62,605 nucleotides of DNA from Octopus bimaculoides. Lineage: Eukaryota. Position 1 is the stretch's first letter; each line of letters begins with the position of its first letter. The notes below the pieces were generated by a model. It saw nothing but the letters and a program-made list of their open reading frames with translations. It was not told the DNA's origin and made no database searches. Position numbers and translations under genes: made by a program. The stretch spans positions 71,233,026 through 71,295,630 of the forward strand of contig NC_068991.1 in assembly GCF_001194135.2 (NCBI RefSeq), given 5' to 3'. Below, one piece after another: positions 42,385 through 42,905 of this stretch.

Positions 42385-42905
42385 GCTGGTCAGCTAAGTC
42401 GTGTTGGAACTGATCAGTTGAACATTGATGAAAATGATCAGCTGGTGGGGGTGTGGCTAATGGACTGGTCAGCTAAGTGCATCTGTTTTGGGATTGATCA
42501 GTGTTGAGTGTGGCTGTTCTCAGACTGGTCAGCTGGGTGTGGCTGTTAGACTGGTCAGCTGTGTCTATTGTGGGATTGGTCAGCTGAGTGTGGCTGTTGG
42601 AATGGTCAGCTAGATGTGATTGCTGCAGGACTGGTCAGCTGGGTGTGGCTGTTAGACTGGTCAGCTTTGTCTATTGTGGGATTGGTCAGCTGAGTGTGGC
42701 TGTTGGAATGGTCAGCTAGATGTGATTGTTGTCAGACTGGTCAGCTGTGTATTGTTGTTTGTAAGATTAGTCAGCTGGGTGTGGCTGTTGCTAGATTGGT
42801 CAGCTGAATGTGTATGGCTGAAGTACTAGTTAACTGACTGTGGCTACTAAAGGAGACATTAGCTGGATACAACTAAGGGGGAATGATCAGGTGGGTGTGG
42901 CTCTG
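42385..42905. repeat. Minisatellite of ~26-27-bp monomers with a 106-bp higher-order period
   Basis: Monomer approximates (GAC/GAT)TGGTCAGCTG(A/G)GTGTGGCTGTT. Higher-order units start at 42523, 42629 and 42735. Confidence 0.9.

What the first reader, a model, noticed from the sequence alone, without database searches (positions are those of the whole stretch)
42385..42905. Intronic array of BCL11's own predicted binding motif overlapping E-boxes: candidate autoregulatory minisatellite
Seen: 12 TGGTCA (42387, 42466, 42526, 42552, 42577, 42603, 42632, 42658, 42683, 42709, 42738, 42797) and 9 CAGCTG. Seven form the overlapping composite TGGTCAGCTG, and three read ATTGGTCA (TGACCAAT on the other strand). 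Known: human BCL11A binds TGACCA through its C-terminal fingers, for example at the gamma-globin TGACCAAT box, and CAGCTG is a proneural bHLH E-box. Seen: the ZF4 and ZF5 helices here (NCSNLTVH, QSSKLTRH) match the human ones as I recall them. Inference: a homotypic platform where BCL11 and bHLH activators compete, giving feedback tunable by copy number. Caveat: the copies arose by tandem amplification and are not independent evidence.
Basis: partly seen in the sequence, partly recalled or inferred. Interest (0 to 1): 0.75.

Follow-up and report, generated by a model that had tools for sequence, protein, structure and literature searches.

The report
Octopus BCL11A intron minisatellite with BCL11 motifs
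A 527-bp tandem repeat inside an intron of the octopus BCL11A gene really does carry twelve perfect copies of the short DNA word that BCL11 proteins bind, but the copies arose by repeat amplification, nothing I could test shows selection on them, and whether the protein uses them is still untested.

Summary
Window 42,386-42,912 is a degenerate minisatellite of 19 monomers (24-33 bp). Its centre is a 106-bp four-monomer unit duplicated at 95% identity. It holds 12 TGGTCA, 9 CAGCTG and 7 TGGTCAGCTG. It lies in the 33.5-kb intron between coding exon 2 and the last exon of Octopus bimaculoides BCL11A. The octopus ZF4-6 keeps every base-contacting residue named for human BCL11A, whose motif is TGnCCA. 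The proposed circuit also has a precedent: in Drosophila, Scute induces the BCL11 orthologue Chronophage, which binds and represses its own locus.

Nothing shows that this array is that element. The multiplicity comes from amplification. About 1.5% of random 26-mers from this window contain the hexamer. The seven decayed monomers have mostly lost the two guanines that BCL11 reads. The hexamer is not clearly better conserved than a second monomer block. The last doubling looks younger than the split from the nearest available octopod. TGACCA is not enriched elsewhere in the window. The reachable parts of three other cephalopod BCL11 loci have no similar cluster.

I could not reach the orthologous intron or test genome-wide dispersal. 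Most likely this is a neutral intronic minisatellite that happens to offer good BCL11 and E-box sites.

The parts
42386..42912 (+). Whole minisatellite: 19 monomers of 24-33 bp. The consensus is TGGTCAGCTG followed by a G/T-rich spacer, often GTGTGGCTGTT.
   Evidence: TRF periods of 26, 51 and 106 bp; monomer parsing and alignment; profile and 106-bp-unit searches hit only this interval.
42387..42525 (+). Left edge: five degenerate monomers (m1-m5). Their cores read TGGTCA, TGATCA, TGATCA, TGGTCA, TGATCA.
42526..42631 (+). 106-bp higher-order unit, copy 1 (monomers A1 B1 C1 D1), with four intact TGGTCA.
   Evidence: the repeat finder family D6; TRF 106-bp period at 95%.
42632..42737 (+). 106-bp higher-order unit, copy 2 (A2 B2 C2 D2). 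It differs from copy 1 at 5 positions, one of which breaks an E-box (CAGCTT in B2).
42738..42912 (+). Right edge: six progressively decayed monomers (m14-m19). Their cores read TGGTCA, TAGTCA, TGGTCA, TAGTTA, TAGCTG, TGATCA.
42978..43183 (.). Copy of a dispersed SINE-like family next to the array. It is not part of the array, and the family's other copies carry no such array.
   Evidence: Self-BLAST hits to 36.7-37.1, 27.6, 24.2 and 54.7 kb; also present in L001.
23591..24010 (+). BCL11A coding exon 2 (aa 15-154, CCHC finger ZF0). It marks the upstream border of the host intron.
   Evidence: tblastn of P0001; ORF translation.
57494..59446 (+). BCL11A last exon (aa 154-803, ZF1-ZF6, stop codon included). 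It marks the downstream border of the host intron.
   Evidence: tblastn at 100% identity.
59135..59371 (+). Coding sequence of ZF4-ZF6, the fingers predicted to read TGnCCA.
   Evidence: C2H2 pattern positions; alignment to human BCL11A ZF4-6 structures.

Best explanation
This is an ordinary G/T-rich intronic minisatellite in Octopus bimaculoides BCL11A.

How it arose: a unit of about 26 bp was amplified by replication slippage or unequal exchange and diverged into monomer variants. A four-monomer 106-bp block was then duplicated recently. The edges are decaying while the centre looks young.

Because the founding unit happened to contain TGGTCAGCTG, amplification automatically produced a dense, same-orientation row of perfect BCL11-type (TGACCA) sites overlapping CAGCTG E-boxes. 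The octopus protein could very probably bind these sites in vitro. No selection for such binding is needed to explain the sequence, and none is visible.

Shown: the anatomy, the location, motif identity, finger conservation, uniqueness within the window, and the pattern of decay. Inferred: the mechanism of origin, neutrality, and in-vitro bindability.
For: - Hierarchical tandem structure with periods of 26, 51 and 106 bp, and a 106-bp unit present twice at 95%.
- Edges decay while the centre is homogeneous.
- 8 of the 12 TGGTCA sit in the recent 2 x 106-bp duplication. Only 8 of 15 non-redundant monomers keep the hexamer.
- In most decayed monomers the change falls at + strand G2 or G3 of TGGTCA: four TGATCA, one TAGTCA, and TAGTTA with an extra change. 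These guanines are read by Arg787 and Lys784 in human BCL11A.
- Mismatch per site is 0.12 for TGGTCA and 0.12 for CAGCTG. In the 11 monomers that carry the block GTGTGGCTGT, it is 0.11 for the 10-mer core against 0.15 for that block, so the hexamer is not singled out.
- The copies of the 106-bp unit differ by 4.7% (CI 1.5-10.7%), against 11.7% divergence in colinear intron blocks between the window and L001.
- 1.5% of random 26-mers from the window contain the hexamer, and the window holds about 16 arrays of period 14 or more. By my arithmetic that gives roughly a one-in-five chance per window of one such array.
- TGACCA is not enriched outside the array.
- At least 120 unrelated tandem arrays in metagenome contigs carry the same 9-mer at similar spacing.
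- The surrounding intron is dense in microsatellites and dispersed repeats.
Against: - The composite of TGGTCA plus CAGCTG in one 26-mer is rare by chance (1 of 58,879 window 26-mers), although the E-box was not specified in advance.
- The 10-mer core is better kept (0.147 mismatch per site) than the second block taken over all 15 monomers (0.253) and than the rest of the spacer. That could reflect constraint.
- None of the 5 differences between the two 106-bp copies hits a TGGTCA, but P = 0.28 under uniformity.
- BCL11A is reported to favour clustered motifs, and a BCL11 orthologue does bind and repress its own locus in Drosophila. The prior that a BCL11 locus contains real BCL11 sites is therefore not small.
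- Neutrality is inferred without orthologous sequence.
Confidence: 0.7

Rival explanations
1. The array is a selected homotypic cis-element through which octopus BCL11 multimers bind TGACCA and repress their own gene. They compete sterically with achaete-scute-type bHLH activators for the overlapping CAGCTG, and the dose is set by copy number.
For: - There are 12 perfect copies of the TGaCCA variant, the one best bound and most enriched in human data.
- All named contact residues (N753, N756, Q781, S782, K784, R787, K817) lie in stretches identical between octopus and human.
- ZF0, which mediates tetramerisation in human BCL11A, is encoded by exon 2 here. Motif multiplicity is proposed to favour oligomer binding, and real peaks average 2-3 motifs.
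- In Drosophila, Scute binds TSS, exonic and intronic sites of Cph and induces it, while Cph binds multiple sites in its own locus and represses itself in gut, with self-binding also seen in larval brain.
- The core 10-mer is the best-kept part of the monomer overall.
Against: - The multiplicity is explained by amplification.
- In most decayed monomers the BCL11-critical guanines are what changed.
- The hexamer is no better kept than the E-box part, and only marginally better than the GTGTGGCTGT block in the monomers that carry it.
- The last doubling is probably younger than the nearest species split.
- There is no TGACCA enrichment elsewhere in 62 kb of the locus.
- There is no cluster or composite in the last exon +/- 10 kb of three other cephalopod BCL11 loci.
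- The Drosophila paper gives no motif-level data.
- There are no occupancy, accessibility or expression data for octopus.
Confidence: 0.1
2. The array is the internal tandem-repeat region of a mobile element, or one locus of a dispersed octopod satellite family. It landed in this intron by transposition rather than arising in place, and it has no relation to the host gene.
For: - The intron is packed with dispersed repeats, and a SINE-like copy starts 66 bp to the right of the array.
- Short AT-rich flanks at 42,240-42,385 and 42,913-42,977 are unique within the window but uncharacterised.
Against: - There is no second copy of the array or its immediate flanks in 62.6 kb.
- No terminal inverted repeats bracket it.
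- The other copies of the neighbouring SINE-like family carry no such array.
- None of this is strong. A family of hundreds of copies in a genome I recall as about 2.7 Gb would rarely show twice in 62 kb.
Confidence: 0.12
3. The array is functional, but not through BCL11. One option is an E-box-only (CAGCTG) bHLH or AP-4 type enhancer. Another is a GGTCA half-site cluster for nuclear receptors. A third is action at the RNA level, as a GU-rich intronic element in the pre-mRNA binding CELF- or TDP-43-type proteins during processing of the 33.5-kb intron.
For: - There are 9 CAGCTG, and the E-box half of the core is as well kept as the TGGTCA half.
- The array is on the sense strand and strongly G/T-rich (GC skew +0.30 and AT skew -0.20 for 42-44 kb).
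- The factor preferences named here come from general knowledge, not from a test.
Against: - The objections about amplification and decay apply equally.
- There is no Rfam hit in the array.
- T before GGTCA is a disfavoured nuclear-receptor half-site (general knowledge).
- There are no conservation or expression data.
Confidence: 0.06

Closest known systems
Non-coding minisatellites (VNTRs) with higher-order repeat structure
   Same: Head-to-tail units of about 26 bp, G/T-rich strand asymmetry, nested periods of 26, 51 and 106 bp, a homogeneous centre with decayed edges, and an intronic location.
   Different: Nothing distinguishes it structurally. Copy-number polymorphism, which defines a VNTR in the strict sense, could not be examined.
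Clustered TGnCCA sites bound by human BCL11A/BCL11B (HBG promoters, the BGLT3-HBBP1 region; PMC12006351, PMC12978192, PMC13225276)
   Same: The same hexamer in its best-bound variant, several motifs within a few hundred bp, and conserved ZF2-3 and ZF4-6 arrays plus ZF0 in the octopus protein.
   Different: Human peaks average 2-3 motifs in mixed variants and orientations within unique sequence. Here there are 12 identical, same-orientation motifs created by tandem duplication, and no occupancy data exist.
Scute-induced, self-repressed Chronophage (Drosophila BCL11) locus (PMC13324515)
   Same: The same regulatory logic as proposed: a proneural bHLH activates the BCL11 gene, and its product binds its own locus, including introns, and represses it.
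   Different: The fly elements are defined by ChIP and NanoDam peaks, not by motifs or repeats. No tandem array is reported. Whether the circuit exists in molluscs is unknown.
Repeat-borne transcription-factor platforms, such as GGAA microsatellites used by EWS-FLI1, promoter or intronic VNTRs (INS, MAOA, SLC6A4 STin2), and the homotypic ZNF410 motif clusters at CHD4 (all from general knowledge)
   Same: Repeat amplification or clustering multiplies a short motif, and copy number can scale output.
   Different: Those cases have binding and reporter evidence. This one has sequence only.

Membership tests
Minisatellite / VNTR | Head-to-tail tandem copies of a 10-100 bp unit | tested here: met
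   TRF periods of 26, 51 and 106 bp; 19 parsed monomers.
Minisatellite / VNTR | Copy number varies among individuals | not testable with these tools
   Only one assembly of the species is available. The assembly has N gaps (2,979 N), so the copy number itself may be collapsed.
BCL11 (TGnCCA) binding-site cluster | Two or more TGnCCA motifs within a few hundred bp | tested here: met
   12 TGGTCA (= TGACCA on the minus strand) in 411 bp; no other TGnCCA variant is present.
BCL11 (TGnCCA) binding-site cluster | The cognate protein of this species keeps the base-contacting residues of ZF4-6 | tested here: met
   Alignment to 6KI6, 6U9Q and 9E6R with E = 3e-50. The ZF4 and ZF5 helices and the LEKH stretch of ZF6 are identical; contact residues are taken from PMC12006351.
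BCL11 (TGnCCA) binding-site cluster | Occupied by the protein in vivo or bound in vitro | not testable with these tools
   No octopus ChIP, CUT&RUN or EMSA data are accessible.
Autoregulatory cis-element of a BCL11 gene | Lies within the gene's own locus | tested here: met
   It lies in the intron between exon 2 and the last exon.
Autoregulatory cis-element of a BCL11 gene | Motif under purifying selection, meaning better conserved than the surrounding repeat | tested here: inconclusive
   The 10-mer core is better kept than the variable spacer. However, TGGTCA matches CAGCTG at 0.12 mismatch per site, and in the monomers that carry the GTGTGGCTGT block the core is only marginally better (0.11 against 0.15). 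Most losses fall on the BCL11-contacted guanines.
Autoregulatory cis-element of a BCL11 gene | Present at the orthologous position in related species | not testable with these tools
   The O. vulgaris and Argonauta gene ranges exceed 100 kb, so no DNA was returned. L001 stops at about window 50.3 kb.
Autoregulatory cis-element of a BCL11 gene | Comparable motif clusters in other cephalopod BCL11 loci | tested here: not met
   At most 2 TGACCA per 500 bp and no composite in L001, L122 and L123. Only the last exon +/- 10 kb was covered in each.
Proneural bHLH-responsive enhancer | Cluster of CAGCTG E-boxes | tested here: met
   9 CAGCTG in the array against 0.29 per kb elsewhere.
Proneural bHLH-responsive enhancer | Enhancer activity or bHLH occupancy | not testable with these tools
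   No functional data are available.
Dispersed satellite or TE-internal tandem repeat | Further copies at unrelated positions | tested here: inconclusive
   There are none in the 62.6-kb window. The rest of the octopus genome could not be searched. Metagenome hits are unrelated arrays.
Dispersed satellite or TE-internal tandem repeat | Terminal inverted repeats or other TE termini bracketing the array | tested here: not met
   No inverted repeat links the two flanks.

The most novel reading that the evidence does not exclude
A lineage-specific minisatellite has been co-opted as the cis-element of an ancient circuit in which a proneural bHLH activates BCL11 and BCL11 represses itself. That circuit is now documented in Drosophila. 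In octopus, tetrameric BCL11 would coat a row of TGACCA sites overlapping CAGCTG E-boxes and exclude the activator, with feedback strength set by a repeat copy number that can change quickly.
Probability: 0.07. Interest if true: 0.7.

Novelty: new member of a known kind. Interest (0 to 1): 0.3.

Why it matters
If the array were a working autoregulatory platform, it would show how tandem amplification can create, in one step, a high-valency site for a multimeric zinc-finger repressor in its own gene. It would also extend the Scute/Chronophage feedback loop from flies to molluscs, in a gene central to neural development in an animal studied for its nervous system.

As things stand, it mainly shows that a repeat containing a short transcription-factor word yields an impressive-looking "homotypic cluster" without any selection. 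It also gives a concrete, cheap hypothesis to test once the octopod genome alignments are consulted.

Tried and rejected
1. Fetching orthologous introns. The O. vulgaris (P0121) and Argonauta hians (P0123) gene models span about 314 and 278 kb and returned no DNA. The third octopod assembly, GCA_006345805.1 (O. sinensis from memory), gave only the last exon +/- 10 kb. That locus ends at about window 50.3 kb, roughly 7.4 kb short of the array.
2. Walking upstream on the 65-kb decapodiform contig through a neighbouring small ORF.
3. Catching orthologous or dispersed copies through ORFs called on raw assemblies. A concatenated six-frame translation of 42,250-42,990 found nothing at E <= 10, which is uninformative.
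4. Scanning metagenome contigs for three cores at monomer spacing. This returned at least 120 contigs, but all are unrelated tandem repeats sharing only the seeded 9-mer. The best BLAST hit was E = 0.025, and none carries GTGTGGCTGTT. I rejected these as homologues and kept them only as a base rate.
5. Rfam over 40-45 kb. There is nothing in the array. The sub-threshold miRNA hits at 43.8-44.3 kb are microsatellite artefacts.
6. A degenerate extension of the array into the G/T-rich stretch at 42,100-42,215. Profile search did not support it.
7. The array as part of the adjacent SINE-like family. I rejected this because the family's other copies lack the array.
8. I left the last protein-database search unused. 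Octopod genome records in that collection carry only annotated genes (one gene in 21.9 kb of L001), so intronic ORFs would not be found.

Full report
**What the window is.** The window is the 3' part of the Octopus bimaculoides BCL11A locus. The large ORF at 57,494-59,446 is 100% identical to residues 154-803 of XP_052827882.1 (803 aa). Residues 15-154 map to 23,591-24,010, and the first 14 residues lie outside the window. The annotated protein has no coding exon between these two. The finding at 42,385-42,905 therefore sits in a 33.5-kb intron, 18.4 kb downstream of exon 2 and 14.6 kb upstream of the last exon. The intron is dense in microsatellites, dispersed SINE-like repeats and assembly gaps.

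**The observation.** All 12 occurrences of the 9-mer TGGTCAGCT in the window are here. Tandem Repeats Finder reports nested periods of 26, 51 and 106 bp. A monomer profile and the 106-bp unit hit only 42,386-42,912, and self-BLAST finds no other copy in the window. The helices NCSNLTVH and QSSKLTRH are encoded at 59,162 and 59,246.

**Anatomy.** I parse 19 monomers of 24-33 bp.
- Five degenerate monomers form the left edge.
- The centre is a four-monomer, 106-bp higher-order unit (A B C D) present twice. The copies differ at 5 of 106 positions.
- Six monomers on the right decay progressively.
- Each monomer is a 10-mer core, TGGTCAGCTG, followed by a G/T-rich spacer of variable length. Eleven of the 15 non-redundant monomers carry a recognisable second block, GTGTGGCTGT.
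- Eight of the 12 TGGTCA lie in the recent 2 x 106-bp duplication. Counting that duplication once, 8 of 15 monomers keep the hexamer and 7 have lost it: four TGATCA, plus TAGTCA, TAGTTA and TAGCTG.

**Is the protein side of the argument sound?** Yes.
- The C-terminal 113 residues align to human BCL11A ZF4-6 from DNA-bound crystal structures (6KI6, 6U9Q, 9E6R; E = 3e-50). ZF4 and ZF5 recognition helices are identical, as is the LEKH stretch of ZF6.
- The residues reported to contact bases (N753, N756, Q781, S782, K784, R787, K817; PMC12006351) all fall in those identical stretches.
- The human motif is TGnCCA. TGaCCA is the tightest-bound variant (KD about 29 nM) and the most enriched in vivo (PMC12978192).
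- The same papers report that BCL11A multimerises through ZF0 (encoded here by exon 2), uses both ZF2-3 and ZF4-6, and favours clustered motifs. Real peaks carry 2-3 motifs on average.
- It is a fair inference, not a demonstration, that octopus BCL11 would bind these monomers in vitro.

In Drosophila the BCL11 orthologue Chronophage is induced by the achaete-scute bHLH Scute, which has ChIP peaks at transcription start sites, exons and introns of Cph. [quoted passage not shown] That paper contains no motif-level analysis, so it supports the logic, not this element.

**Does anything show that this array is such an element?** The tests I could run say no, or are neutral.
The relevant chance is that a founding unit contains the hexamer. 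This holds for 1.5% of random 26-mers from this window, and for 4.6% with any TGNCCA. With about 16 arrays of period 14 or more in the window, my arithmetic gives roughly a one-in-five chance per window of one such array. That is before allowing for the freedom to choose among many known motifs. The joint presence of CAGCTG is rare (1 in 58,879), but it was noticed after the fact.
In the 11 monomers that carry GTGTGGCTGT, the core scores 0.11 against 0.15 for that block. The core is better kept than the variable spacer, but the spacer is slippage-prone G/T-rich sequence and my monomer boundaries are anchored on the core.
3. *The weakest core position is the wrong one for the hypothesis.* It is the third base of TGGTCA. 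In most decayed monomers the change falls on G2 or G3 of the + strand. These are the two guanines read by Arg787 and Lys784.
4. *The last doubling looks young.* The two 106-bp copies differ by 4.7% (CI 1.5-10.7%). Colinear intron blocks between the window and the GCA_006345805.1 octopod differ by 11.7%. A third of the sites are therefore probably younger than that species split, although homogenisation could mimic youth.
5. *There is no enrichment elsewhere in the locus.* Outside the array, TGACCA occurs 37 times, below the shuffle expectation for the whole window of 42.7 +/- 6.5.
6. *Other cephalopod loci show nothing similar where I could look.* In the last exon +/- 10 kb of three other cephalopod BCL11 loci, no 500-bp stretch has more than two TGACCA, and the composite never occurs. 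These loci do not cover the orthologous position.

**What could not be done.**
- The decisive comparisons could not be made: presence in orthologous introns and copy number elsewhere in the genome.
- A search with the array's six-frame translation found nothing.
- A metagenome scan for three cores at monomer spacing returned at least 120 contigs. All are unrelated tandem repeats of periods 10-31 bp that share only the seeded 9-mer. They serve only as a reminder that periodic arrays containing any given short word are common.
- Rfam finds nothing in the array.
- No inverted repeats bracket the array. The SINE-like copy 66 bp to its right belongs to a family whose other copies lack the array.

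**Verdict.** The sequence is best explained as a neutral, locally amplified intronic minisatellite whose founding unit happened to contain TGGTCAGCTG (confidence about 0.7). A TE-borne or dispersed origin is a variant of the same neutral reading (about 0.12). Other functional readings, such as an E-box-only enhancer or a GU-rich RNA element, are less likely still.

The hypothesis is cheap to test by aligning the orthologous introns and by a whole-genome BLAST of the 106-bp unit. Until then the finding deserves modest interest. It is a real and tidy structure in an interesting gene, but of an ordinary kind.

Noticed in passing
window 36632-37079 (also 43058-43183, 24158-24380, 47718-47935, 54581-54799; several places in L001): A SINE-like dispersed family. 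At 36.6-37.1 kb it forms a 134-bp tandem (3.3 copies at 95%) bracketed by (ATT)n microsatellites at 36188-36254 and 37095-37168.
   Followed up: partly
window 7431-8033 (-), 28810-29355 (+), 1399-1817, 10182-10600, about 50.2-50.7 kb; L001 1744-2175: A dispersed repeat family of about 400 bp whose copies give spurious 180-200 aa ORFs sharing 'AKLRG[CR]KHTSIGCQAM'. It is also present in the other octopod assembly.
   Followed up: no
window 61065-61777: A 340-bp unit repeated 2.1 times at 99% identity, about 1.6 kb downstream of the BCL11A stop codon. It may lie in the 3' UTR.
   Followed up: no
window gaps near 3.8-4.5, 26.3-26.6, 30.6-31.3, 44.9-45.3, 51.0-51.6 and 52.0-52.3 kb: 2,979 N in several gaps, which suggests a scaffolded short-read assembly. 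Copy numbers of tandem arrays, including the 106-bp unit of the finding, may be collapsed.
   Followed up: no
window 42441-42448: The octamer GCTGGTGG, identical to E. coli Chi and similar to classical minisatellite cores, sits inside degenerate monomer m3. Probably a coincidence.
   Followed up: no
window 43820-44281 and 41340-41970: Sub-threshold Rfam hits to mir-297, mir-466 and similar families (at most 66.6 bits against gathering scores of 85-90). They fall on (TGTA)n and (TG)n microsatellites and are artefacts.
   Followed up: yes
window 23528-23590: The older O. bimaculoides model (P0124, 882 aa) reads this stretch upstream of exon 2 as coding and adds an unrelated 72-aa N-terminus. The current model (P0001, 803 aa) starts with MSRRKQGKPQ, as vertebrate BCL11A does. 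The annotation versions disagree at the 5' end.
   Followed up: partly
L004, L016, L030, L031, L041, L067 (sample Ga0224511); L005, L011, L063, L077, L092, L093, L099, L106: Two recurrent satellite families in metagenome contigs, unrelated to the octopus array, contain TGGTCAGCT. One is a 23-bp unit, TGGTCAGCTGGTACAACGAGTGG. The other is a 31-bp unit, TGGTCAGCTACATGTAACAGCCCCTAAGCAA. They may be host or eukaryotic DNA in those samples.
   Followed up: no
window 58520-58600 (protein linker between ZF3 and ZF4): An acidic run (EEENEEEEEEELEEELEEDDD) in the long ZF3-ZF4 linker parallels the polyglutamate stretch described in the human BCL11A linker (PMC12978192).
   Followed up: no
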